This document shows, piece by piece, positions 2,637 through 61,326 of a stretch of 64,000 bases of DNA. The position numbers and the translations under genes were made by a program. The notes below the pieces were generated by a model. That model saw nothing but the letters and a program-made list of their open reading frames with translations. It made no database searches and had not been told where the DNA came from. The number at the start of each line of letters is the position of its first letter. Position 1 is the first letter of the stretch. Location of the stretch: IMG/VR virus record IMGVR_UViG_3300032323_001214, positions 124,001-188,000 of that record. One strand, written 5' to 3'.

Positions 2637-5600
2637 ATGTTAAGAGATGTATTTTATTACGGTTTAAAACCAAACGCACACCCAAGAGAAAAACATGCCA
2701 TTGATTTAGCTGATGCTAGACAGCAATGTACTACCGAACATTTTTGGATAATCAATGAACATTGTGACTATAAACATTTTGATTGGGACTGGAGCTTTGA
2801 TTTTTTGCCAGATGAAGATGTCTGGGCAGAAGAACACAACAATGTCTGGCCTAGTCAATATCAGAAAGATAGTGGCACCTGGCTATGTTCAAAAGAATAC
2901 AGTGAAATAATAATTTATCGAGCCGATGTAGATCCAGTACCATTAAAAGATGAGATACTATCTAATTGGAAAATTATAGAATATATTGAAAAAAATAAAT
3001 TCGACTTCAAGTGGCATCCTGACCCAAGCGATCCCCCATATGTATATGTTTTTGGTAATCAGTGGTATCCTGGTACAGTTATGCCTACTGTTGAGTATCA
3101 CGTTAAAGGTGCTACATCACGTAAATACATAACAGAAAATATAGCGCACTTGTTACCTATACCTAAATTATTCAACATACTGCACGAAGTAGAATCATTT
3201 GATTATAGTTGGCGTCCTGACCCAACAAGTCCCCCTTACATATATGTATTTGGTAATACTCAATATCCTGCAAGTGTGATGCCTACAATAGAATTTCACG
3301 TAGAAGGTGCAACCGAACGTAAATTTATTGAAAATATAAAACCAAAACTAGTACAGCATCCTCAAGATTTTACTATACTTGATGATATCGATCCTGATAG
3401 CTTTGACTTCAGTTGGGTTCCTGATCCAAATGCGCCCCCATATATTTACGTATGGGGCAATCAATGGAATAAACCTGAAGACAAGGCAAGTATACAATAT
3501 GCAGTAGAAGGTGCAACTGAATATAAGTATATGGAAAAGCGAGTTAAACGCAAGCCTTCAATGACAAATTGGACAATCCCACATCAGGTAGTACGACAGA
3601 GTTTTGATTTTAGTTGGGAACCAAATCCTAACGACCCTCCATATTTGTATCAATTTGGTTCGCAATGGCAAAAGACAGGTGGACCTATTTTTACTGCACC
3701 TGGATGTAATACGGATACTGAAATCAAATATATTAATGTCATTAGCAGTAAACGAATTCCTGATGTTGAAAATAAAAATTGGAAAACGTTGTTACCTATA
3801 GCAAAATTTGATTATAGCTGGCACCCTGACAGCACAGAAGAACCATACATCTATGTTTTTGGTAATCAGTGGAATAGTGCTGAGTTAGAACCAACTATAG
3901 AGTATCGTGTACCTGGTGCAACACAGAAAAAATATGTTCATGATGTTGTAGCAGAAGTAGCTGCATATGAAGAGGGTTGGGAACTGATAGAAGAAATTCA
4001 CACCTTTGATTTTAGCTGGAGACCTAATCCAACTGATCCTCCCTACATATATGTGTTTGGTACTACTCAGTATCCCGGAACAATAATGCCATCAGTAAAA
4101 CTACATAAAGCTGGCGCAACACAAGAAAAGTTTATAGACGATATTGTAGCAAAACTTGTACAGAAACCTGAGTTATTTAAGAATACTGAGTTGATTAAAG
4201 AGTTTGATTATTCATGGAGACCGAATCCTAAGGATCCCCCATTCGTGTATCAGTTTGGTACACAATGGGCTAAAACACATGGTCCACAATTTACGGTAGA
4301 GGGGGCACTTGAGCACAAGTTTATTAGTGAACCTGTTGCTACTATTTTACCTGACATGTCTTATTGGGAAATTCCTAAAGATGTAGATACAACTAAGTTT
4401 GACTTTAGTTGGCACCCTGATAGTACTAGCCCTCCCTACATATATCAGTTTGGTACTATACTTGATGAAGATGATGGTCCTAAATATATTGTACCCGGCA
4501 ATACTGGTATAATTGTTAAACTTGAACGTCCAGAGATTATTCTTTCTGAATTAGATTTTCCTAAGTACTACTTAAAAACAACACTAGAAGATTTGATTGA
4601 AGAACACGAAGGTGAGATATTTTGGGCATTGAATCCAGAACTTGATTATTCTAATTTTGACTTCAAGTGGGTTCCAGATAAACAAAATGTTTATCACGTA
4701 AACGCATTTGGTAGTAAAGATAACATCAACACTCAAACTTACTTTGTTAACGGTAAGATGTGGCAGCGTGGATACAAAGATATAAACTACATCGAGGATA
4801 AAACAATTGATATTAGAACTAAAATTGATATGTTCTTTGTTGATAGAGGTAACAGCGAATCCAATGAGAGATTTGAAAAACTAAAAGAAAAACATAGTAA
4901 TATAATTAAGACACGATATTTAAATAGTTGGGTTGATACCATTAACCGTTGTATTAAAAAATCAAACACTAATTTATGTTGGATACTGAATAGTGAATTA
5001 GATTATAGTGAATTTGAATTTGATTTTTATCCTAGCCCATGGCAAATGAGACATGTGCATGTATTTGGTACTCAGTGGAGTCACTGGGGTACAACATTTA
5101 TGGTTAATAAAAACTCATTTGCAGATGATACCAAATATATCAAAATCATTGAGCATTTGAGCAACTTGAATTTTGTTAAGAGAAGAACGGCAAAAGCATC
5201 TAATTGTCTGTATAATATTTACGTGATAGATCATAAAAACAGTCACACACCAGATGTTGTAAAGCAGTTAGAAAGTAAAGCTACTGGTAAACAAGTAACT
5301 GTAGTTAAGTATGATACTAGCTATCTAAAAACATTTAAGGAAATTTTAAGATCATGTGAGAACAAAAACGAACATTATATTTGGGTTTGTGCAAGTGTGT
5401 GTGATTATGAAAATTTTGATTTTACATATGTGTGCGATCCGTTTGCAAAAGAGCAGTTGCATGTGTTCCCTAGTGATAAGCAAAAGTTTGGAGATACCTT
5501 TTTAATCGATGTTAATAAACTACGTGATTTGATTTCTAACATGTCAATGTTAGAAGACTATGAAAAAATAAATTATAATCAACATCAACGAGCTAAAAGA

Positions 5601-6569
5601 TTACCTGCTCCTAAAATTACAAGTTTAGATGATACTCACGTTAAAGATGCTAGCCAGCAGTTTGACTTCCCCTATGCAATACTTACAACACATGACAATA
5701 CTAATTTACAGGAAGTTGACCATGAACCAATGAGTTTATGGACTCCGGACAGTAAAAACTTAATTATCACCAGTACTGGTGCAACGAGAGTAGTAGTTCC
5801 TCAAGAAGCAAAGAACTATATAGAACGTGAGTTATATGATTACCCATATATAACTAGTTCTAGTAAACTTGCAAAATCTAAGCCACTGGATATAGTCTTC
5901 CTAAGCAACGGTGAAACTGGTGCTGACGAGAACTATGAACACTTACTAAAAGTGACTAAAGGATTATCCAATCGTGTTGTAAGAGTTGATGGAGTTAACG
6001 GTCGTGTTCAAGCCTACCATGCAGCGGCAGAAGCAAGCGAAACACCATGGATGTTTACTGTTTTTGCTAAGTTGCGTATAGATGATAAATTTGATTTTTC
6101 ATGGCAACCCGACAGATTGCAGGTATCAAAACATTATATTTTCAACGCAACTAATCCAGTCAATGGTTTAGTATACGGTCATCAAGCTATGATTGCTTAT
6201 AACAAAAAAATAGTGTTATCTAATAGTGGCAAGGGACTAGACTTCACGTTGGATGATGAGCACGAAGTTGTTGATATTAATTCAGGAATTGCAGTATACA
6301 ACACGGATGAATATATTACATGGAGAACTGCTTTTAGAGAGGCATTGAAATTAAAAAACACTATAGTCAAAAATCCAAATGACAATGCTTCTATTAGCCG
6401 TTTAATGACATGGTCTACCAAAGGTGACGGAAATTATGGGGAATACAGCGTAAAGGGTGCGTTGGATGCGATTGAATACTATGACGAAGTTAACGGTGAC
6501 ATGGATAAACTTAAATTGAGTTACGAATGGGCATGGCTCAAAGATAAATTTTCCTCATCGACTAAATAA
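2637..6569 (+). CDS. 1310-aa repeat protein with several glycosyltransferase-like (GT-A-derived) domains
   Basis: Eight tandem FD(F/Y)xWxP(D/N)...P(Y/F)xYxFG repeats, then three to four degenerate GT-A-like units; the last begins DIVFLSNGETGADENYEHL. Confidence 0.6.
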   Translation: MLRDVFYYGLKPNAHPREKHAIDLADARQQCTTEHFWIINEHCDYKHFDWDWSFDFLPDEDVWAEEHNNVWPSQYQKDSGTWLCSKEYSEIIIYRADVDPVPLKDEILSNWKIIEYIEKNKFDFKWHPDPSDPPYVYVFGNQWYPGTVMPTVEYHVKGATSRKYITENIAHLLPIPKLFNILHEVESFDYSWRPDPTSPPYIYVFGNTQYPASVMPTIEFHVEGATERKFIENIKPKLVQHPQDFTILDDIDPDSFDFSWVPDPNAPPYIYVWGNQWNKPEDKASIQYAVEGATEYKYMEKRVKRKPSMTNWTIPHQVVRQSFDFSWEPNPNDPPYLYQFGSQWQKTGGPIFTAPGCNTDTEIKYINVISSKRIPDVENKNWKTLLPIAKFDYSWHPDSTEEPYIYVFGNQWNSAELEPTIEYRVPGATQKKYVHDVVAEVAAYEEGWELIEEIHTFDFSWRPNPTDPPYIYVFGTTQYPGTIMPSVKLHKAGATQEKFIDDIVAKLVQKPELFKNTELIKEFDYSWRPNPKDPPFVYQFGTQWAKTHGPQFTVEGALEHKFISEPVATILPDMSYWEIPKDVDTTKFDFSWHPDSTSPPYIYQFGTILDEDDGPKYIVPGNTGIIVKLERPEIILSELDFPKYYLKTTLEDLIEEHEGEIFWALNPELDYSNFDFKWVPDKQNVYHVNAFGSKDNINTQTYFVNGKMWQRGYKDINYIEDKTIDIRTKIDMFFVDRGNSESNERFEKLKEKHSNIIKTRYLNSWVDTINRCIKKSNTNLCWILNSELDYSEFEFDFYPSPWQMRHVHVFGTQWSHWGTTFMVNKNSFADDTKYIKIIEHLSNLNFVKRRTAKASNCLYNIYVIDHKNSHTPDVVKQLESKATGKQVTVVKYDTSYLKTFKEILRSCENKNEHYIWVCASVCDYENFDFTYVCDPFAKEQLHVFPSDKQKFGDTFLIDVNKLRDLISNMSMLEDYEKINYNQHQRAKRLPAPKITSLDDTHVKDASQQFDFPYAILTTHDNTNLQEVDHEPMSLWTPDSKNLIITSTGATRVVVPQEAKNYIERELYDYPYITSSSKLAKSKPLDIVFLSNGETGADENYEHLLKVTKGLSNRVVRVDGVNGRVQAYHAAAEASETPWMFTVFAKLRIDDKFDFSWQPDRLQVSKHYIFNATNPVNGLVYGHQAMIAYNKKIVLSNSGKGLDFTLDDEHEVVDINSGIAVYNTDEYITWRTAFREALKLKNTIVKNPNDNASISRLMTWSTKGDGNYGEYSVKGALDAIEYYDEVNGDMDKLKLSYEWAWLKDKFSSSTK

Positions 6570-6592: not shown

Positions 6593-7276
6593 ATGATAAA
6601 AAATATAGCAATTGCACTTACCGTAGCTGTCATGACAGTCGGGTGTGCCACCAACAATGATTACAAGTTATATGCTGAAACACAGCAAAAAATTGCACAC
6701 GCTCATGCCATGGCTGAGACTGCAAGATATGCTGCTCTCGCAGAAATTGCCAAAACCGCTGATCCCGGTGCACGGGTTGCTGCCGTTATGAGCATTAATT
6801 TTGGATCACAGTCTGGAAACAGCCCTAGACTTAACCAAGTTGCTGCCCCGAAAACATTAGGTGACACTGCCCTACAATGGACTAGCGTGTTGTTGCCAAG
6901 TTTAACACAATTTTACGGTATCAGTGCTAACCGTCAAGTTGCTATTACACAAAGCAACAATCAAGCAGCCATAGCACAGAGTACAAATGCAACATTTGCC
7001 ACAATGAACAGCAATATGGCAAAATCTAATACTGACATTGCTACCGCTGGATTTACGGCTGTAACCAATGTAGCTAACACAGGTATTGCACAAGTAGGAG
7101 CAACTGCGGCGGCTGGATTGACTGCGGTTACCACAGTAAATGCTAATAGCAACACTGCTATTACCAACGTAGCTAATGCGGCTAATAACAGTATTAAAGC
7201 AGTTGCGGATATTATTCCTTTGTTGCAACCAAATGTAACCACAACTACTACGAATAATAACACTGTGGCACCATAA
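6593..7276 (+). CDS. Ala/Thr/Asn-rich predicted lipoprotein
   Basis: GGAG Shine-Dalgarno before ATG 6593; signal peptide with lipobox TVGC. Confidence 0.7.
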   Translation: MIKNIAIALTVAVMTVGCATNNDYKLYAETQQKIAHAHAMAETARYAALAEIAKTADPGARVAAVMSINFGSQSGNSPRLNQVAAPKTLGDTALQWTSVLLPSLTQFYGISANRQVAITQSNNQAAIAQSTNATFATMNSNMAKSNTDIATAGFTAVTNVANTGIAQVGATAAAGLTAVTTVNANSNTAITNVANAANNSIKAVADIIPLLQPNVTTTTTNNNTVAP

Positions 7277-7290
7277 TATACCCAAAATAG

Positions 7291-7319
7291 TTGTAATCAA
7301 CTATGTGTTATAATATAAT
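7291..7319 (+). promoter_or_regulatory. sigma70-type promoter for the tmRNA locus
   Basis: TTGTAA-N17-TATAAT. Confidence 0.7.
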
Positions 7320-7325
7320 GTAAGT

Positions 7326-7390
7326 TAAGACTGTATGAAGTAGACAGAAAAGGATTCAAGACGCGGGGGCAGTGCCCGCCAGGTCCACCA
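7326..7390 (+). ncRNA. ssrA: Permuted tmRNA, acceptor piece (T-arm, 3' acceptor strand, encoded CCA); 5' end approximate
   Basis: GACGCGGGGGCAGTGCCCGCCAGGTCCACCA. CAGGTCC pairs with GGGCCTG at 7764 with a G3.U70 pair and A73; GATTCAA pairs with TTGGGTC; GACTGT pairs with ACAGTC. Confidence 0.9.
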
Positions 7391-7402
7391 TAAGGAAATT
7401 TG

Positions 7403-7762
7403 ATGCGTATTAAAGAACTAACCGAGAGTGTGAATATTCCTAGTGTGTTGTATCACGCTACGTACCGTCCATTGCTGAAAAGTATTAGGCAACACGGTTT
7501 AGGCGGAGATAAGGCCCAGGCTAAATGGGAAGATAGCAAGCCCGGTGTAGTCTATCTTGCGTTAGATCCTAACGTTGCGGAAAGTTACGCTGAAACAAGC
7601 GAAGCGGTACCCGACGAATGGTTAGATGAAATCATTATATTGAAGATTTCAACTGCTGGATTGGATCTATCTAAACTCAAGGTAGATGCTAATGTTCTTG
7701 ACAACGAAGGTGATACATTGGAGTATCACGGAGTAATACCCACTAAATTAGTTTCTTTATAA
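7403..7762 (+). CDS. ADP-ribosyltransferase-fold protein (Tpt1/KptA NAD-binding-lobe-like) inside the tmRNA intervening segment
   Basis: AAGGA Shine-Dalgarno directly after CCA; LYHAT..L.SI...GL, VYLA.D...A..YA, IILKI and EYHGVIP match the KptA C-lobe pattern. Confidence 0.65.
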   Translation: MRIKELTESVNIPSVLYHATYRPLLKSIRQHGLGGDKAQAKWEDSKPGVVYLALDPNVAESYAETSEAVPDEWLDEIIILKISTAGLDLSKLKVDANVLDNEGDTLEYHGVIPTKLVSL

Positions 7763-7763
7763 T

Positions 7764-7945
7764 GGGCCTGACACAGGATCGATTGGGTCAAGAGTACGGA
7801 AATGGACAGTCCGGCAATGTAGAAGCCGTTAGGATTGGGGTTACCCGGTCGAAGACACGCAAAAAGTAATCGCAAACGATTCACAATTCCTTCAAGCCGT
7901 TAACGCTTGATAGCGAGGGTGGTACCCTTGTCAAAGAATAACCCA
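7764..7945 (+). ncRNA. ssrA: Permuted tmRNA, coding piece (5' acceptor strand, pk1 region, tag ANDSQFLQAVNA); 3' end approximate
   Basis: GGGCCTGACACAGGATCGA start; resume context AAAAAGTAATC-GCA-AAC-GAT (E. coli AAAAAATAGTC-GCA-AAC-GAC); tag frame 7872-7910 ends TGA TAG. Confidence 0.88.
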
Positions 7946-7969
7946 AATAGGAGTGTACGCTCCTATTTG
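7944..7969. terminator. Hairpin between convergent tmRNA and endonuclease transcripts
   Basis: Perfect 10-bp stem CAAATAGGAG-tgtacg-CTCCTATTTG overlapping the endonuclease stop codon. Confidence 0.55.
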
Positions 7970-8628
7970 TTTGGGTATTCATATGTCCATGTTCCATCAG
8001 GCAAATATTTTCTTTTTCTACCAGTGACCGTCGCTGATTGTTTTCCTGCACTTTTCTTTCCATTCTCAGCCGCAGTTGGATTCGGCAAGCCCTTATTCCA
8101 GGCAGTACGCCCTTTTAATGATTCTCGCAGTTTTAAGTTTGATTTACCCAAAGATTTTTTACCACTACGCACCCCGTTACATTTATGCCCGCATACAAAT
8201 TCTTCTCTTATAGGATGATGACAAAATTCTAATCTAATAAAAACACCATTACAAATGACACATGTATAAGTTCGTTCTTCTTTTGGTTTAGTTTTTGCTT
8301 TTCGATTATATTCAGCTAAATCCTCTCGTTTAGATCCAGACATCGAAAACTTGGACATTGACTTCTGATAATGCCTGTTAAGTAAAAGTGGGTTACCCCA
8401 ATGGTCTTTTATGAGGTTATTTTCAAATTCAAACGCTGATATTTGGTCAACAAAATATGCTAGAATTTCAGAATCATATTCTGAAAAATTGTTTTTAACA
8501 TGCTTAGATGAAGTAAAATAGCAAATACCAAGGTCTTGCTCGGCCACTACTGTATTAGCTGACCTCATTCCTATATAAAATTTTCCTGTCGTGCGATGCT
8601 TCATGATGTAAACATATGGTAAAAACAT
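7963..8628 (-). CDS. Free-standing GIY-YIG (Seg-like) homing endonuclease
   Basis: PYVYIMKHRTTGKFYIGMR..YFTSS..E...I; basic AWNKGLP tail; own ATAAATA promoter (8645-8651, minus strand) and AAGGA Shine-Dalgarno. Confidence 0.85.
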   Translation of the reverse strand: MFLPYVYIMKHRTTGKFYIGMRSANTVVAEQDLGICYFTSSKHVKNNFSEYDSEILAYFVDQISAFEFENNLIKDHWGNPLLLNRHYQKSMSKFSMSGSKREDLAEYNRKAKTKPKEERTYTCVICNGVFIRLEFCHHPIREEFVCGHKCNGVRSGKKSLGKSNLKLRESLKGRTAWNKGLPNPTAAENGKKSAGKQSATVTGRKRKYLPDGTWTYEYPNK

Positions 8629-8709
8629 ATTCTATCCTTTCTTCTATTTATCAAATTATGATGAAAACGGTGCTATAGCAGCCTAATTTATACCTCGTAA
8701 CAGAAACTC

Positions 8710-8736
8710 AATAAAGGGCACTAGTTGCCCTTTATT
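8710..8736. terminator. Bidirectional intrinsic terminator
   Basis: AATAAAGGGCA-ctagt-TGCCCTTTATT. Confidence 0.75.
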
Positions 8737-8751
8737 CTTGGTTTCACGCAT

Positions 8752-8769
8752 TTGTCATCGTATTGTCAC
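8752..8769 (+). promoter_or_regulatory. Pho box (PhoB site) upstream of pstS
   Basis: TTGTCAT-cgta-TTGTCAC: two 7-bp repeats at 11-bp spacing matching the CTGTCAT-N4-CTGTCAC consensus; a weaker third half-site GTTTCAC lies at 8741. Confidence 0.8.
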
Positions 8770-8820
8770 AATTCTTGAAGTAAATACTTGTGTAATACTA
8801 ACACACAAGGAGACTATTAC

Positions 8821-9828
8821 ATGAAAAAACTAACAGCACTATTAGGTGCATTGTTAATATCAACTGTTGCATTCAGTGCAGACATAACAGGTGCAGGTGC
8901 TACCTTCCCATTCCCAATCTATGCCAAGTGGGCAGAAGCCTACAAGAAAGAAACTGGCATTGGGCTTAACTATCAATCAATTGGATCATCCGGCGGCATT
9001 CGTCAAATCAATGCTCGCACAGTGACTTTTGGTGCTACAGACGCTCCAGTCAAGGGCGAAGACTTAGACAAGCAGGGACAGGTGCAGTTTCCTGCTATCA
9101 TCGGCGGAACAGTTCCTGTAGTAAACTTAGATGGTTTTAAACCAGGTGAACTACGCATCACTGGACCAGTTATGGCAGAAGTGTTCTTGGGCACGATCAA
9201 TCGTTGGAATGATCCTAAACTAACAGCATTAAATCCTGGCAAAGCATTGCCAAACGCAGAAATCACAGTGGTGCACCGCGCTGATGGAAGTGGTACAACA
9301 TTTAACTGGACAGACTATCTTGCCACAGTCAGCCCCGAATGGTTACAACGTGCAGGTCGTGGTGCTACAATTAAATGGCCAGCTGCTAGTTCAGTAGGCG
9401 GCAAAGGCAACGAAGGTGTTGCTGCCAACGTGGCCAGAATCAAAGGTAGCATCGGTTATGTAGAGTATGCTTATGTTAAGAAAAACAATATGACTTTTCT
9501 ACAAATACAGAACAAAGCAGGTCGTTGGGTCAGTCCAGATGACTTGACATTTGCCGCAGCCGCTGACGGTGCTGATTGGTTCAGTGTTCCAGGTATGGGA
9601 TTGAGCATTGTGGATCAACGCAATCCCAATGCTTGGCCAGTGAGTTCTGCCAGTTTCATCATCATGTACAAGGATCCTGCTGACAAAAAAGCCAGTCAAG
9701 AAGTGTTGAAGTTTTTTGATTGGGCATTCCGCAACGGCAAGAAAGATGCTATTGATTTAGACTATGTACCATTGCCCGATGCATTGACACGCCAGATCCG
9801 TGAACGTGTTTGGACACAGATCAAATAA
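8821..9828 (+). CDS. pstS: Phosphate ABC transporter periplasmic binding protein PstS
   Basis: Signal peptide; ITGAGATFP.PIY.KW, YQSIGSSGGI, FGATDAP, HRADGSGTTF, GKGNEGVA, IGYVEYAY; GGAG Shine-Dalgarno before ATG 8821. Confidence 0.97.
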   Translation: MKKLTALLGALLISTVAFSADITGAGATFPFPIYAKWAEAYKKETGIGLNYQSIGSSGGIRQINARTVTFGATDAPVKGEDLDKQGQVQFPAIIGGTVPVVNLDGFKPGELRITGPVMAEVFLGTINRWNDPKLTALNPGKALPNAEITVVHRADGSGTTFNWTDYLATVSPEWLQRAGRGATIKWPAASSVGGKGNEGVAANVARIKGSIGYVEYAYVKKNNMTFLQIQNKAGRWVSPDDLTFAAAADGADWFSVPGMGLSIVDQRNPNAWPVSSASFIIMYKDPADKKASQEVLKFFDWAFRNGKKDAIDLDYVPLPDALTRQIRERVWTQIK

Positions 9829-59852: not shown

Positions 59853-59943
59853 ATAAATACATAATACACTCTTAATTCTGAGAGTTTATGCAGTACCCAC
59901 TGCGTAGCGGCTAGAACCCGCAATCTATATTAAGGAAAATCAA
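59853..59943 (+). promoter_or_regulatory. Late promoter plus three-hairpin 5' leader
   Basis: ATAAATA then ACTCT/AGAGT, TATGCAGT/ACTGCGTA and GCGG/CCGC stems ahead of an AAGGA Shine-Dalgarno. Confidence 0.55.
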
Positions 59944-61326
59944 ATGGGACGTCCTCTAAAAATCGCAAAGGCTCAAGCAGTCTTAACAATCACCGGCACT
60001 AATGCTACAACTGAAGAAGTAACTGTTTCACAAAATCTAACAACTTTGGGTGTCATCAAAGGTATGCCATTCGTCACAGCAAGTTCAACTGGTGGCCTAA
60101 TTGCTAACACAACTTACTGGATTTTAAATGTAACAGGTAATAGCACATTTACAGTATCGGCAACAGACTTAAGTGCAAACCCAACATACACTCCAGTTAA
60201 CTTATCCGGAACATCTGGTACATCAGTATCAGCCTCAGTCGGTGTTGTTGATGCTTATTTCAACAATCCAGTAGGTGGTGCAGGTTTCCCAGCAACTAAT
60301 GCTAATACTTATGGTGTAGTTGGTGGTAACACCGCAATCATTGGTAAACAAGTTCTATGTAACGTAGCATTTGGTCAAAATGGTACAGGTACAATTATTG
60401 CAGATACAGCAAGTGACATAGTAGTCGGTGTAGGTACTGACTTTGCAAACGTAGCGGCAGGTACAATTCTGTTTGCTGTATATGACGCCGGTGCTGGCCC
60501 AGCTACATTAGTTGGTACTACATCAGCAACCGGGGGTAATATAACTGTTGCTGTTGCTAACACGCAAAATACAGGTAACATCATTGGTACATCCGGTAAT
60601 GCTCAAACATTAGTAGAAGGTGGTCCAGTTACATTTAGTGCTAACTTAGGTGGCTTAGTGACAGGTACTCAATACTGGGTATTGAACGTTGCTAACGCAA
60701 GTGCATTCACTGTTTCTACTAGACCAGGTGGTGCTGAAGTTGATTTATCAAATGCAACAGGTACTCCAACTGCATCACAACAACAAGTTGTATTGACTGG
60801 TAATGCAGCAAATCCAGCAGTTGGTGTTACTAGTCAAGGTGACCCATTCGTTCAAGCATTACCAGAAGCAGGTTATATCGTTCGTCAGAAGGGTAAGACA
60901 AAGTACTTGGTAACAGGTGCAACTACAGGTATTACTGGTGCAGTATATACAGCTAACGTTGCTAACACTGCATTGACACCAAACACAATGTCTATCATTG
61001 GAACTAATGCGGCTTCAGGTACACAATATATTTCAAGTATCAATGATTACAACAGTGAAGTGTTCCCAGCAACAGTTGCTTCAGGTTCATTAAGTGCTGG
61101 TACTGTTTATACAATTTACAGTGCAGGTACTACAAACTGGACTTCAGTTGGTGCTATGGCTAACATGACAGGCATTACATTCACTGCAACTGGTACTGCT
61201 TCAGGTACAGGTCTTGCTGTATTGGCTAACGTCAATCCTGACATTATTGCTACATTCAACACAGCCGCTGTTGCGAATGCAGCTAATGGTCAGCCGAACC
61301 CAATCGTTACAATTAATGGCGTATAA
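59944..61326 (+). CDS. Virion structural protein with repeated GGL..T.YW(I/V)LNV...FTVS modules
   Basis: Two copies of the module; G/T/A/N-rich; late promoter. Confidence 0.7.
   Translation: MGRPLKIAKAQAVLTITGTNATTEEVTVSQNLTTLGVIKGMPFVTASSTGGLIANTTYWILNVTGNSTFTVSATDLSANPTYTPVNLSGTSGTSVSASVGVVDAYFNNPVGGAGFPATNANTYGVVGGNTAIIGKQVLCNVAFGQNGTGTIIADTASDIVVGVGTDFANVAAGTILFAVYDAGAGPATLVGTTSATGGNITVAVANTQNTGNIIGTSGNAQTLVEGGPVTFSANLGGLVTGTQYWVLNVANASAFTVSTRPGGAEVDLSNATGTPTASQQQVVLTGNAANPAVGVTSQGDPFVQALPEAGYIVRQKGKTKYLVTGATTGITGAVYTANVANTALTPNTMSIIGTNAASGTQYISSINDYNSEVFPATVASGSLSAGTVYTIYSAGTTNWTSVGAMANMTGITFTATGTASGTGLAVLANVNPDIIATFNTAAVANAANGQPNPIVTINGV

What the first reader, a model, noticed from the sequence alone, without database searches (positions are those of the whole stretch)
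7872..8736. Two alternative tmRNA tag tails on either side of an inverted homing endonuclease
Seen: the tag reads ANDS-QFLQAVNA-stop, ending in NA rather than AA. Just past the endonuclease promoter, 8651-8686 reads S-NYDENGAIAA-stop. That is followed by ACCTCGTAACAGAA, similar to ACCCTTGTCAAAGAA after the first tag, and then a terminator. Joining at the shared TCA gives ANDSNYDENGAIAA. Inference: the endonuclease cassette invaded the tag frame, brought a replacement 3' end and stranded the old tail; the new tag may resist its own nuclease or be degraded differently. Chance similarity is possible for so short a sequence.
Basis: inference. Interest (0 to 1): 0.68.

Follow-up and report, generated by a model that had tools for sequence, protein, structure and literature searches.

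The report
Homing endonuclease swaps phage tmRNA tail
A jumbo-phage tmRNA gene has been invaded by a small homing-endonuclease cassette that brought its own replacement tag-and-tail module and left the old tail as a decaying relic just in front of pstS; the same layout recurs in at least 18 other phage contigs, so it looks like a previously undescribed way for selfish DNA to colonise tmRNA genes and shuffle their degradation tags.

Summary
The window is part of a 250-kb virus record. It holds a circularly permuted (two-piece) tmRNA gene (Rfam RF04321, 78.8 bits) whose tag reads ANDSQFLQAVNA-stop.

A 221-aa GIY-YIG-like endonuclease gene lies tail-to-tail with it. Just upstream of that gene's start sits a second tail: DENGAIAA-stop, a pseudoknot-loop motif and a terminator.

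HE-free relatives carry one tail. It runs ...ALAA-stop, hairpin, ACCTCGTAACAGAAACTCA, terminator, then pstS, which is collinear with the second copy here. So the second copy is the old resident tail in its native place. A 782-bp block (7878-8659: new tag, tail, terminator and endonuclease) is the insertion.

All 19 endonuclease-bearing loci examined have a second tail. None of 31 endonuclease-free loci does.

- The junction is at AAC|GAT (codons 2/3), not at TCA.
- The old tag was a 10-mer of the ANDEQFALAA type that has since drifted, not ANDSNYDENGAIAA.
- The "NA" ending was not created by the invasion. It occurs in an endonuclease-free syntenic relative (ANDETYLLAANA).

The closest known kind is the mobile endonuclease ORFs of fungal mitochondria, which replace a gene's 3' end. 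This is a new variant: an RNA gene, in phages. The cleavage site and the fate of the NA tag are untested.

The parts
7291..7319 (+). sigma-70-like promoter (TTGTAA-17-TATAAT) in front of the tmRNA precursor
   Evidence: Consensus scan, 10 of 12 matches. L017 has TTGACA-17-TATAAT at the same place. Function is inferred.
7329..7390 (+). tmRNA acceptor piece: P2 3' strands, T arm, acceptor 3' strand and encoded CCA (7388-7390)
   Evidence: Rfam RF04321 alignment. 96-100% identical to relatives.
7391..7763 (+). Intervening segment of the permuted gene, filled by a 119-aa ORF (7403-7762; SD AAGGA at 7392-7396) with an ADP-ribosyltransferase/Tpt1-like fold
   Evidence: Relatives have 43-216 nt here. 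L212 has the same ORF inside its tmRNA.
7764..7871 (+). tmRNA coding piece, 5' part: acceptor 5' strand GGGCCUG (G3-U pair with the 3' strand), P2 and PK1
   Evidence: Rfam alignment. 93% identical to L216 over 7762-7889.
7872..7910 (+). Active tag reading frame ANDSQFLQAVNA plus TGA
   Evidence: The same tag is in L119. Related NA-type tags are in L017, L218 and L224.
7878..8659 (.). The 782-bp insertion relative to empty-site alleles, bounded by GAT on both sides: new tag codons 3-12, hairpin, pseudoknot-like element, terminator, endonuclease gene and its upstream motif
   Evidence: Alignment with HE-free tmRNA-pstS loci L044, L049 and L099. Conserved right end in other loci.
7892..7938 (+). 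Structured tail of the active copy: hairpin 7892-7897/7905-7910 holding the stop codon, stem 7913-7920/7924-7931, and loop motif ACCCTTGTCAAAGAA at 7924-7938
   Evidence: RNAfold. Nearly identical in L224 and homologous in L218 and L017.
7944..7969 (.). Hairpin terminator shared by the tmRNA (+) and the convergent endonuclease gene (-)
   Evidence: The endonuclease stop codon lies inside it.
7963..8628 (-). Free-standing homing endonuclease gene, 221 aa: GIY-YIG-like N-terminal domain, Cys4 and NUMOD3-like C-terminal region
   Evidence: PHROG 314, E 1e-8. YVY...YIG motif. Pfam GIY-YIG sub-threshold. AF2 model and Foldseek best matches are the GIY-YIG domains of UvrC and I-TevI. 155 homologs.
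8645..8659 (.). Conserved cassette end TATTTATCAAATTAT. Its reverse complement holds ATAAATA 16 nt before the endonuclease ATG (T4-late-promoter-like)
   Evidence: The full motif, with C or A at position 8, is conserved in the main GIY-YIG group (window, L119-L124, L222-L225). The TATTTA(T/G) core precedes the endonuclease start in the other loci too. The promoter role is inferred.
8660..8686 (+). Relic of the old tag, codons 3-10 plus stop: DENGAIAA*
   Evidence: It aligns codon for codon with DEQFALAA* of HE-free relatives, 20/27 nt.
8687..8710 (+). Relic of the old tail. The hairpin 3' strand and pseudoknot 5' strand (about 19 nt) are replaced by TTT, followed by AT and an intact ACCTCGTAACAGAAACTCA
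   Evidence: Comparison with L216, L044 and L093. The same deletion is seen in the L017 and L229 relics.
8710..8736 (.). Terminator of the old tail, still in its native position in front of pstS

Best explanation
A free-standing GIY-YIG-type homing-endonuclease cassette sits inside the mRNA-like part of a phage-encoded two-piece tmRNA gene.

The cassette is about 0.78 kb. It consists of a complete replacement module on the tmRNA strand (tag codons 3-12, stop-codon hairpin, pseudoknot-like element, terminator), the endonuclease gene on the other strand, and a short conserved end that probably holds its promoter. It entered between codons 2 and 3 of the resident tag.

The gene therefore still makes a full tmRNA, now with the tag ANDSQFLQAVNA. 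The resident tag-tail-terminator was pushed 782 bp downstream. There it is cut off from the tmRNA body and is decaying: a 19-nt deletion removes two helix strands, and it has drifted codons.

Shown:
- the anatomy;
- homology of each copy to different natural tail types;
- collinearity of the relic with empty-site alleles;
- strict co-occurrence of endonuclease and second tail across 19 loci.

Inferred:
- The cassette spreads by endonuclease cutting of endonuclease-free tmRNA alleles during co-infection.
- The break is repaired from the invaded allele. The conserved tmRNA body serves as the left homology arm and the relic tail as the right arm.
- The replacement module, and hence the tag, is carried along.
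- Recombination between the two tails can later delete the endonuclease.
For: 1. Rfam finds a full permuted tmRNA ending at the first tag. The body is 88-100% identical to about 35 viral-contig relatives.
2. HE-free relatives have a single tail...ALAA-stop, hairpin, TAGGGTA..ACCTCGTAACAGAAACTCA, terminator. The window's second copy shares GCAGCCTAA and the exact 19-20-mer.
3. L044, L049, L073/L099, L011/L002 and L067 have pstS (79-87% aa identity) starting 182-193 nt after the tag start. The window's relic, terminator, repeat element and pstS start align with them column by column.
4. The active tail is of a different natural type. It is 85% identical to the L224 tail and homologous to L218 and L017, all with ..A(A/V)NA tags.
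5. 19 of 19 HE+ loci carry a second tail directly upstream of the HE start: window, L119-L125, L017, L062, L079, L222-L229. None of 31 HE-free loci does.
6. Of eight HE homologs sampled blind across 86-39% identity, seven lie next to a permuted tmRNA by Rfam.
7. The relics decay in different ways, as expected for non-functional DNA: a frameshift in L122/L123, in-frame stops in L121 and L079, and deletions in L119, L120, L121 and L017.
8. The assembly is confirmed by an independent contig spanning 7804-8916.
Against: - No cleavage site is known. The left junction of the invaded allele (GTAATCGCAAAC|GATTCACAATTC) is almost the same as in empty-site alleles such as L044. If the enzyme recognised only that region it would cut its own genome. 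What confers immunity is unexplained.
- The endonuclease most like the window's in the blind sample (L222, 86%) sits beside a different active-tail type, whereas a 60% relative (L224) shares the window's tail. The replacement tail is therefore not rigidly linked to the endonuclease, and tails are also exchanged by other recombination.
- The same 19-nt deletion occurs in the relics of L017 and L229, which lie in other genomic contexts. Part of the relic may thus have travelled with the cassette rather than being this phage's own.
- The nuclease family assignment rests on motif, sub-threshold HMM and weak fold matches.
- No RNA-end data exist for this phage; the reads tool returned contigs only.
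Confidence: 0.8

Rival explanations
1. The active NA-type tail is native to this phage. The endonuclease landed downstream of an intact tmRNA gene, dragging a tail fragment from a previous host as passive baggage. Nothing was replaced.
For: L218, a syntenic HE-free relative, has the NA-type tail natively. The relic's deletion is shared with the relics of L017 and L229 in other contexts, which suggests relic DNA moves with the cassette.
Against: The relic, its terminator, the repeat element and pstS are collinear with empty-site tmRNA-pstS alleles, with the same spacing (182-193 nt against about 189 after restoring the deletion). L218 lacks pstS at this place altogether. The window body up to codon 6 is closer to class-I L216 (93%) than to L218.
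Confidence: 0.12
2. A local tandem duplication of the tmRNA 3' end happened first. The endonuclease later inserted between the two paralogous copies.
For: The two copies are direct repeats of the same functional module, and the motifs ACCCTTGTCAAAGAA and ACCTCGTAACAGAA are homologous.
Against: Each copy is closer to a different natural allele in other phages than to its partner. The active copy is 85% identical to L224. The relic is 85% identical to the L017 relic and shares an exact 20-mer with L216. The two copies are about 72-75% identical to each other, with gaps. No endonuclease-free locus with two tails was found among 31.
Confidence: 0.04
3. The second tail is functional: an alternative 3' module used through read-through or recombination, a regulatory element or promoter region for the endonuclease, or a small peptide gene.
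For: The tag-end codons GCAGCC-stop are retained in most relics even where the pseudoknot part is deleted. They lie where the endonuclease promoter or 5' UTR must be. The distal hairpin may still terminate transcripts entering pstS.
Against: It is separated from the tmRNA body by a terminator and a convergent gene. It lacks two helix strands. In other loci it carries frameshifts, premature stops or larger deletions. Residues conserved in working tags (F6, L8) have drifted here to G and I.
Confidence: 0.03
4. Chance resemblance of a short stretch to a tmRNA tag end.
For: The region is short and AT-rich, and was noticed post hoc.
Against: 0 of 100 shuffles give the composite pattern. The match to relatives is an exact 19-20-mer. 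The feature recurs in 18 other loci.
Confidence: 0.01

Closest known systems
Mobile endonuclease ORFs (mORFs) of fungal mitochondria that form gene hybrids (Allomyces macrogynus atp6; Glomus atp6, atp9, cox2, nad3; PMC3630166)
   Same: An endonuclease ORF enters the 3' part of a host gene. It brings a foreign copy of that 3' part, which becomes the expressed end. The native 3' part is left displaced downstream, where it matches relatives that lack the element. The inserted and native copies are divergent.
   Different: Here the target is an RNA gene (tmRNA), not a protein gene, and the host is a bacteriophage. The endonuclease is on the opposite strand with its own start signals, rather than in phase with the host gene. 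A terminator is part of the imported module. Two nuclease types (GIY-YIG-like and HNH-like) share one C-terminal region at the same target.
Free-standing Seg/Mob-type homing endonucleases of T4-like phages (intronless homing, marker exclusion; own knowledge)
   Same: A small GIY-YIG or HNH gene sits between or within phage genes. Modular DNA-binding repeats of NUMOD type occur in homologs. A late-promoter-like motif is present. Spread is presumed to be by double-strand-break repair during co-infection, with co-conversion of flanking markers.
   Different: Seg and Mob genes normally sit between genes or split a protein gene. They are not known to carry a duplicate of the target's 3' end or to leave a relic. 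No Seg or Mob enzyme is known to be dedicated to tmRNA genes.
Integrase-borne genomic islands and prophages in tmRNA genes (Islander, PMC4383910, abstract listed; PMC11915505)
   Same: The mobile DNA splits the tmRNA gene, restores it with its own copy of the 3' end, and leaves a displaced fragment.
   Different: There is no integrase and no identical att repeats. The insert is only 782 bp. The site is at the start of the tag rather than in the 3' tRNA-like end. The gene is a phage gene of permuted form.
Group I introns, some with LAGLIDADG endonuclease genes, in the T-loop of tmRNA genes (PMC11915505)
   Same: Selfish DNA with a homing endonuclease colonises a tmRNA gene while keeping it functional.
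   Different: Function is kept here by duplication and replacement, not by splicing. The site is in the tag, not the T-loop, and no intron was found.
Phage-encoded two-piece tmRNAs of aquatic myophages (Melnitz, pelagimyophages; PMC9004378)
   Same: A permuted tmRNA gene carried by a large aquatic phage, behind an early-type promoter.
   Different: No glutamine riboswitch was detected. The intervening segment holds a protein gene, and the tail is invaded by an endonuclease cassette.

Membership tests
Permuted (two-piece) tmRNA, Rfam RF04321 | Covariance-model score above the curated threshold, with acceptor piece before coding piece | tested here: met
   78.8 bits against a gathering score of 47, model positions 1-213. 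The genome-wide quick search missed it, as did ARAGORN, probably because of the 373-nt intervening segment.
Permuted (two-piece) tmRNA, Rfam RF04321 | tRNA-Ala-like acceptor stem with a G3-U pair and an encoded CCA | tested here: met
   GGGCCUG (7764-7770) pairs with CAGGUCC followed by ACCA (ending at 7390). Read.
Permuted (two-piece) tmRNA, Rfam RF04321 | Tag frame starting at a GCA resume codon and ending in a hydrophobic Ala-rich C-terminus plus stop | tested here: met
   ANDSQFLQAVNA*. The ending is NA rather than AA. The A(A/V)NA ending is kept through synonymous differences in L017, L218 and L224.
Permuted (two-piece) tmRNA, Rfam RF04321 | Processing into two base-paired RNAs, and trans-translation with SmpB | not testable with these tools
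   No SmpB in the 67%-complete virus record; the host SmpB is presumed. Only contigs were returned by read laying, so no RNA ends.
GIY-YIG homing endonuclease | GIY ... YIG sequence motif with 10-11 residues between | tested here: met
   YVY at residues 5-7 and YIG at 18-20, with 10 residues between. Y7 is nearly invariant and Y18 and G20 are invariant in 37 homologs.
GIY-YIG homing endonuclease | Pfam PF01541 match above the gathering score | tested here: not met
   16.3 bits against 22.6, E 0.012. SegE_GIY-YIG gives 14.4 bits against 25. One homolog (P0166) has a precomputed PF01541 hit.
GIY-YIG homing endonuclease | GIY-YIG alpha/beta fold of the catalytic domain | tested here: inconclusive
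   AF2 model with pLDDT 83. The best Foldseek matches are the GIY-YIG domains of UvrC and I-TevI (probability 0.87-0.92, TM by target about 0.5), but E is 0.07-0.3.
GIY-YIG homing endonuclease | Site-specific DNA cleavage and homing | not testable with these tools
   Needs enzyme assays. Only the distribution pattern supports mobility.
mORF-type gene-hybrid-forming endonuclease element | An inserted foreign 3' part contiguous with the gene core, followed by the endonuclease ORF, followed by the displaced native 3' part | tested here: met
   Order in the window: 7872-7969, then 7963-8628, then 8660-8736. The same order is seen in 18 other loci.
mORF-type gene-hybrid-forming endonuclease element | The native part matches relatives without the element, and the inserted part is divergent from it | tested here: met
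   The relic is collinear with the empty-site alleles L044, L049 and L099. It shares an exact 20-mer with L216. The inserted tail is of another type.
mORF-type gene-hybrid-forming endonuclease element | Endonuclease ORF in phase with, or co-oriented with, a protein-coding host gene | tested here: not met
   The host gene is an RNA gene and the ORF is on the opposite strand.
Integrase-mediated island in a tmRNA gene | A tyrosine or serine integrase within the insert, and identical att core repeats at both ends | tested here: not met
   The 782-bp insert holds only the endonuclease ORF. The two tails are divergent and share only GAT at the boundaries.
Group I intron in a tmRNA gene | An intron in the T-loop, detectable as Intron_gpI | tested here: not met
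   No intron family matched in the window at gathering thresholds. The T arm is uninterrupted.

The most novel reading that the evidence does not exclude
Selection for immunity to these endonucleases, rather than for proteolysis alone, drives the diversity of tag and tail sequences in phage tmRNAs. The cassette-borne ...A(A/V)NA tag would then be a working alternative degron that sends tagged host or phage proteins to a different fate than ...LAA tags. On this reading the endonuclease cassettes act as vehicles that move functionally distinct degradation tags between jumbo phages.
Probability: 0.15. Interest if true: 0.8.

Novelty: new variant of a known kind. Interest (0 to 1): 0.62.

Why it matters
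Two routes of invasion of tmRNA genes are described in the papers read here: integrase-borne islands at the 3' end, and group I introns in the T-loop. The 2025 tmRNA database paper lists only these (PMC11915505). This locus and its 18 relatives would add a third route: free-standing GIY-YIG/HNH endonuclease cassettes that keep the gene alive by bringing a spare tag-and-tail module. That trick was previously documented for protein genes of fungal mitochondria.

Three consequences follow.
- Relics mark past invasions and give precise empty-site and filled-site pairs for testing homing.
- The cassettes move degradation-tag sequences horizontally. This may explain the unusual variety of tags, including ...ANA ends, among closely related phage tmRNAs.
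- The endonucleases are candidates for new sequence-specific enzymes whose target is a conserved RNA gene.

The locus also shows that the intervening segment of a permuted tmRNA gene can house protein genes.

Tried and rejected
- ARAGORN found no tmRNA, and the quick own-genome search with RF04321 found none. Only full cmscan did.
- BLASTN of 7250-8800 against the INPHARED phage collection gave nothing.
- The junction 17-mer scan returned 86 loci, but only five were real, all already known.
- A back-translated pattern for a tag ANDENGAIAA found no viral contig. That reading of the old tag was dropped in favour of a drifted ANDEQFALAA type.
- The global pairwise identities of the short tails discriminate only weakly. 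Motif-level and flank-collinearity evidence was used instead.
- RNAalifold on five NA-type or related tails gave no useful consensus, with a poor MAFFT alignment and -1.9 kcal/mol. Pseudoknot covariation was therefore not established; only per-sequence hairpins were.
- Read laying returned contigs only, so there are no RNA 5' or 3' ends and no expression evidence for this phage.
- L227 has a relic-like tail upstream of the endonuclease but no Rfam tmRNA hit on its short contig. It is left unresolved.
- Integrase island, group I intron, tandem duplication and chance were considered and rejected (see rivals and membership tests).
- Searches of the own record for SmpB, ClpP and RF-1 were negative, but the record is only 67% complete.
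- Complex prediction was not used; no binding claim is made.
Full report
**What the window is.** The window is bases 124001-188000 of a 249.6-kb IMG/VR virus record, estimated 67% complete. The surroundings fit a freshwater jumbo phage: a 1310-aa repeat protein, pstS and a freshwater-2 RNA motif.

**Checking the observation.**
- Rfam's permuted-tmRNA model matches 7329-7910 at 78.8 bits (gathering score 47). Its last positions align to GCA AAC GAT TCA CAA TTC CTT CAA GCC GTT AAC GCT TGA, which reads ANDSQFLQAVNA-stop.
- ARAGORN and the quick genome search miss the gene, probably because the intervening segment is unusually long.
- A 221-aa ORF on the minus strand (7963-8628) converges on the tmRNA and shares a hairpin terminator with it (7944-7969).
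- Twenty-two bases beyond its start codon, 8651-8686 reads S-NYDENGAIAA-stop. ACCTCGTAACAGAAACTCA follows at 8692-8710, then a second terminator at 8710-8736.
- The composite pattern GCAGCCTAA...ACCTCGTAACAGAA is unique in the window and absent from 100 shuffles.
- A Logan contig of the probable source run covers 7804-8916 without a mismatch.

**Anatomy of the tmRNA gene.**
- A sigma-70-like promoter lies at 7291-7319.
- The acceptor piece ends with CCA at 7388-7390.
- The coding piece starts at G7764. GGGCCUG pairs with CAGGUCC and includes the G3-U pair.
- The tag occupies 7872-7910.
- RNAfold places the stop codon in a 6-bp hairpin (7892-7897/7905-7910). An 8-bp stem follows (7913-7920/7924-7931), then the terminator.

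**Relatives without the endonuclease.** A T-arm pattern scan of viral contigs, filtered by BLAST, gave about 35 loci with the same tmRNA. The acceptor piece is up to 100% identical and the coding piece 80-97%.
- Their intervening segments are 43-216 nt.
- Their tags are mostly ANDSQFALAA or ANDEQFALAA.
- After the tag comes one tail: a hairpin around the stop codon, TAGGGTA..ACCTCGTAACAGAA.., and a terminator. I call this the class-I tail.
- A minority have a second tail type, CGAGGTAGTTATACCTTGTCACC...
- Three syntenic relatives found through the upstream lipoprotein gene are especially informative. L216 has ANDSQFALAA with a class-I tail that shares an exact 20-mer with the window's distal copy. 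L217 has ANDSVYALAA, also class I. L218 has ANDETYLLAANA, with a tail and terminator clearly homologous to the window's proximal copy, and no endonuclease or second tail.

**Empty-site alleles.** In L044, L049, L073/L099, L011/L002 and L067, pstS (79-87% aa identity to the window's) starts 182-193 nt after the tag start.
- Aligned to these, the window's distal copy, its terminator, a pair of TTGT(A/C)A repeats, the Shine-Dalgarno sequence and the pstS start are collinear.
- The distal copy is therefore the resident tail in its original place.
- Bases 7878-8659 (782 bp, bounded by GAT on both sides) are extra.
- Removing them joins GCA AAC to GAT GAA AAC GGT GCT ATA GCA GCC TAA.
- The relic aligns codon for codon with DEQFALAA of L089 (20 of 27 nt). 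It has changed at exactly the positions conserved in working tags (F6, L8). The old tag was therefore most likely an ANDEQFALAA-type 10-mer that has drifted since it was cut off.
- The relic also lacks about 19 nt, comprising the 3' strand of the stop-codon hairpin and the 5' strand of the next stem. It could not fold like a working tail.

**Recurrence.** Protein-guided searches found the same endonuclease beside a permuted tmRNA in L119 (96% aa, same tag) and L120-L124 (78% over residues 1-181).
- L125 has a shorter GIY-YIG-like enzyme that shares only the C-terminal 40 residues.
- L017 has an HNH-like N-terminus joined to the same C-terminal region, 47% identical over residues 84-219.
- L062 and L079 carry a 129-130-aa GIY-YIG-like gene in the same position.
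- The word search gave 155 homologs. Eight were sampled across 86-39% identity. Seven lie tail-to-tail with a permuted tmRNA by Rfam.
- All eight show a tag-tail remnant immediately upstream of the endonuclease start, after a TATTTAT motif.
- In total 19 endonuclease-bearing loci have a second tail. Thirty-one endonuclease-free loci have one tail and no endonuclease hit within 1.6 kb.
- The relics differ in type and in their damage, as expected of dead DNA. L124, L125, L222 and L079 keep full tails. L122/L123 have frameshifts. L121 and L079 have in-frame stops. L119, L120, L121, L017, L229 and the window have deletions.
- In the main GIY-YIG group (window, L119-L124, L222-L225) the cassette end TATTTAT(C/A)AAATTAY is conserved and abuts codon 3 of the relic, GAY in all but L225.

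**Which copy came in.**
- The active tails of L120-L124 are all of one type, while their relics are of three types.
- In the window the relic keeps the native flank, and the active tail matches tails of other lineages (L224, L218, L017).
- This fits import of the active module with the endonuclease.
- The link is not rigid. L222, whose enzyme is 86% identical to the window's, has another active-tail type, whereas L224 (60%) has the window's type.
- The relic's 19-nt deletion is shared with the relics of L017 and L229 in unrelated contexts. The proximal part of the relic may therefore be co-converted along with the cassette.

**Mechanism (inferred).** By analogy with free-standing phage homing endonucleases (own knowledge) and with fungal mitochondrial mORF elements (PMC3630166), the model runs as follows.
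- The enzyme cuts endonuclease-free tmRNA alleles of co-infecting phages.
- Repair copies the invaded allele, using the conserved tmRNA body on the left and the relic tail on the right as homology.
- Because the neighbours of tmRNA differ among these phages, placing both arms inside the tmRNA gene makes the cassette portable. The price is disruption of the gene, which is paid by carrying a spare tail.

What protects the invaded allele is not clear. Its left junction is nearly identical to empty sites, so recognition must involve the sequence further into the tag or tail, or the cut lies elsewhere.

**The NA ending.** Tags ending A(A/V)NA occur in the window, L119, L017, L224 and the endonuclease-free L218. 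Codon usage differs at synonymous sites: GCC GTT AAC GCT, GCA GCT AAC GCT and GCT GCA AAC GCC. This argues that the ending is translated and maintained. It is a natural allele that the cassette picked up, not a by-product of invasion. Whether it changes proteolysis is untested. The phage record encodes no SmpB, ClpP or RF-1.

**The endonuclease.**
- PHROG 314 (homing endonuclease) matches at E 1e-8.
- It has a YVY-10-YIG motif with invariant Y18 and G20.
- The Pfam GIY-YIG match is below threshold.
- The AF2 model has pLDDT 83. Its best structural neighbours are the GIY-YIG domains of UvrC and I-TevI, at weak E-values.
- Four invariant cysteines and a repeated G-R/K-x-W-N-K-G-like C-terminal region are present. 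Some homologs carry a NUMOD3 annotation.

**Comparison with what is known.**
- Phage two-piece tmRNAs are known (PMC9004378).
- The 2025 tmRNA database paper describes standard, intron-containing and permuted gene forms, integrase islands, and T-loop group I introns, some with LAGLIDADG genes. It mentions a tRNA inside an intervening sequence as unique (PMC11915505).
- Four full-text searches found no report of a free-standing endonuclease cassette in a tmRNA tag. The library is incomplete, so this is absence of evidence only.
- The closest described kind is the fungal mitochondrial mORF with an inserted foreign C-terminus and a displaced native C-terminus.
- I therefore rate this as a new variant of a known kind.

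**Verdict.** Interest is moderate to high, because the pattern is a family-wide phenomenon with clean filled and empty sites that make homing and tag function directly testable.

Noticed in passing
window 7391-7763 (ORF 7403-7762, + strand); also L212:2428-2988: The intervening segment of the permuted tmRNA gene is filled almost exactly by a 119-aa ORF. The SD starts 2 nt after the CCA, and the stop codon ends 1 nt before the coding piece. The ORF has 236 homologs and no Pfam family. Its AF2 model (pLDDT 77) is closest to the NAD-binding lobe of RNA 2'-phosphotransferase Tpt1/KptA (Foldseek E 2e-4), with invariant H18, Y62 and E64. The same ORF sits inside the tmRNA of L212. L218 and L217 have unrelated 64-aa and 38-aa ORFs there, and L216 has two T-arm-like hairpins.
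   Followed up: partly
window 8752-8769: TTGTCAT-CGTA-TTGTCAC direct repeats lie 50 nt upstream of pstS. They resemble a Pho box (own knowledge). Relatives keep TTGTAATCA repeats at the same place.
   Followed up: no
L017:998-1624 and L229:1801-2427, against window 7963-8628: Endonucleases at the same tmRNA site have different N-terminal nuclease domains (HNH-like in L017 and L229, GIY-YIG-like in the window). They share the C-terminal Cys4/NUMOD-like region and even about 70% DNA identity there. This is domain shuffling on a common DNA-binding module.
   Followed up: partly
L226:417-1121 and L225:1-400: In two large phage contigs the tmRNA/endonuclease locus lies within 1-2 kb of a ClpP protease gene (L226) or a peptide-chain release factor gene, PCRF/RF-1 (L225). 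Some of these phages may therefore carry further ribosome-rescue or proteolysis genes. None was found in the window's own record.
   Followed up: partly
window 2637-6569: A 1310-aa protein built of about a dozen repeats of roughly 60-70 residues (FDFSW.PDP.DPPYIYVFG.QW...). It has no Pfam or PHROG match and is conserved in the syntenic contigs L216-L218.
   Followed up: no
window 59869-59946: Rfam freshwater-2 RNA motif (61.9 bits) upstream of an ATG. This fits a freshwater origin.
   Followed up: no
L230 (NZ_JBBAKG010000001.1, 183-kb contig of a MAG labelled Haliscomenobacter): This is the only one of about 185,000 species genomes that holds the 25-mer conserved in this phage tmRNA family. 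It may be a misbinned phage contig or a host hint.
   Followed up: no
window 7325-7401 and 7756-7833, as laid by run X19: A 537-nt contig from a lake metatranscriptome library covers both tmRNA pieces, with a 119-nt spacer instead of 354 nt. A related tmRNA precursor, or its DNA, is thus present in an RNA library. The conserved tmRNA parts are far deeper than their flanks in two further metagenomes of the same study.
   Followed up: partly
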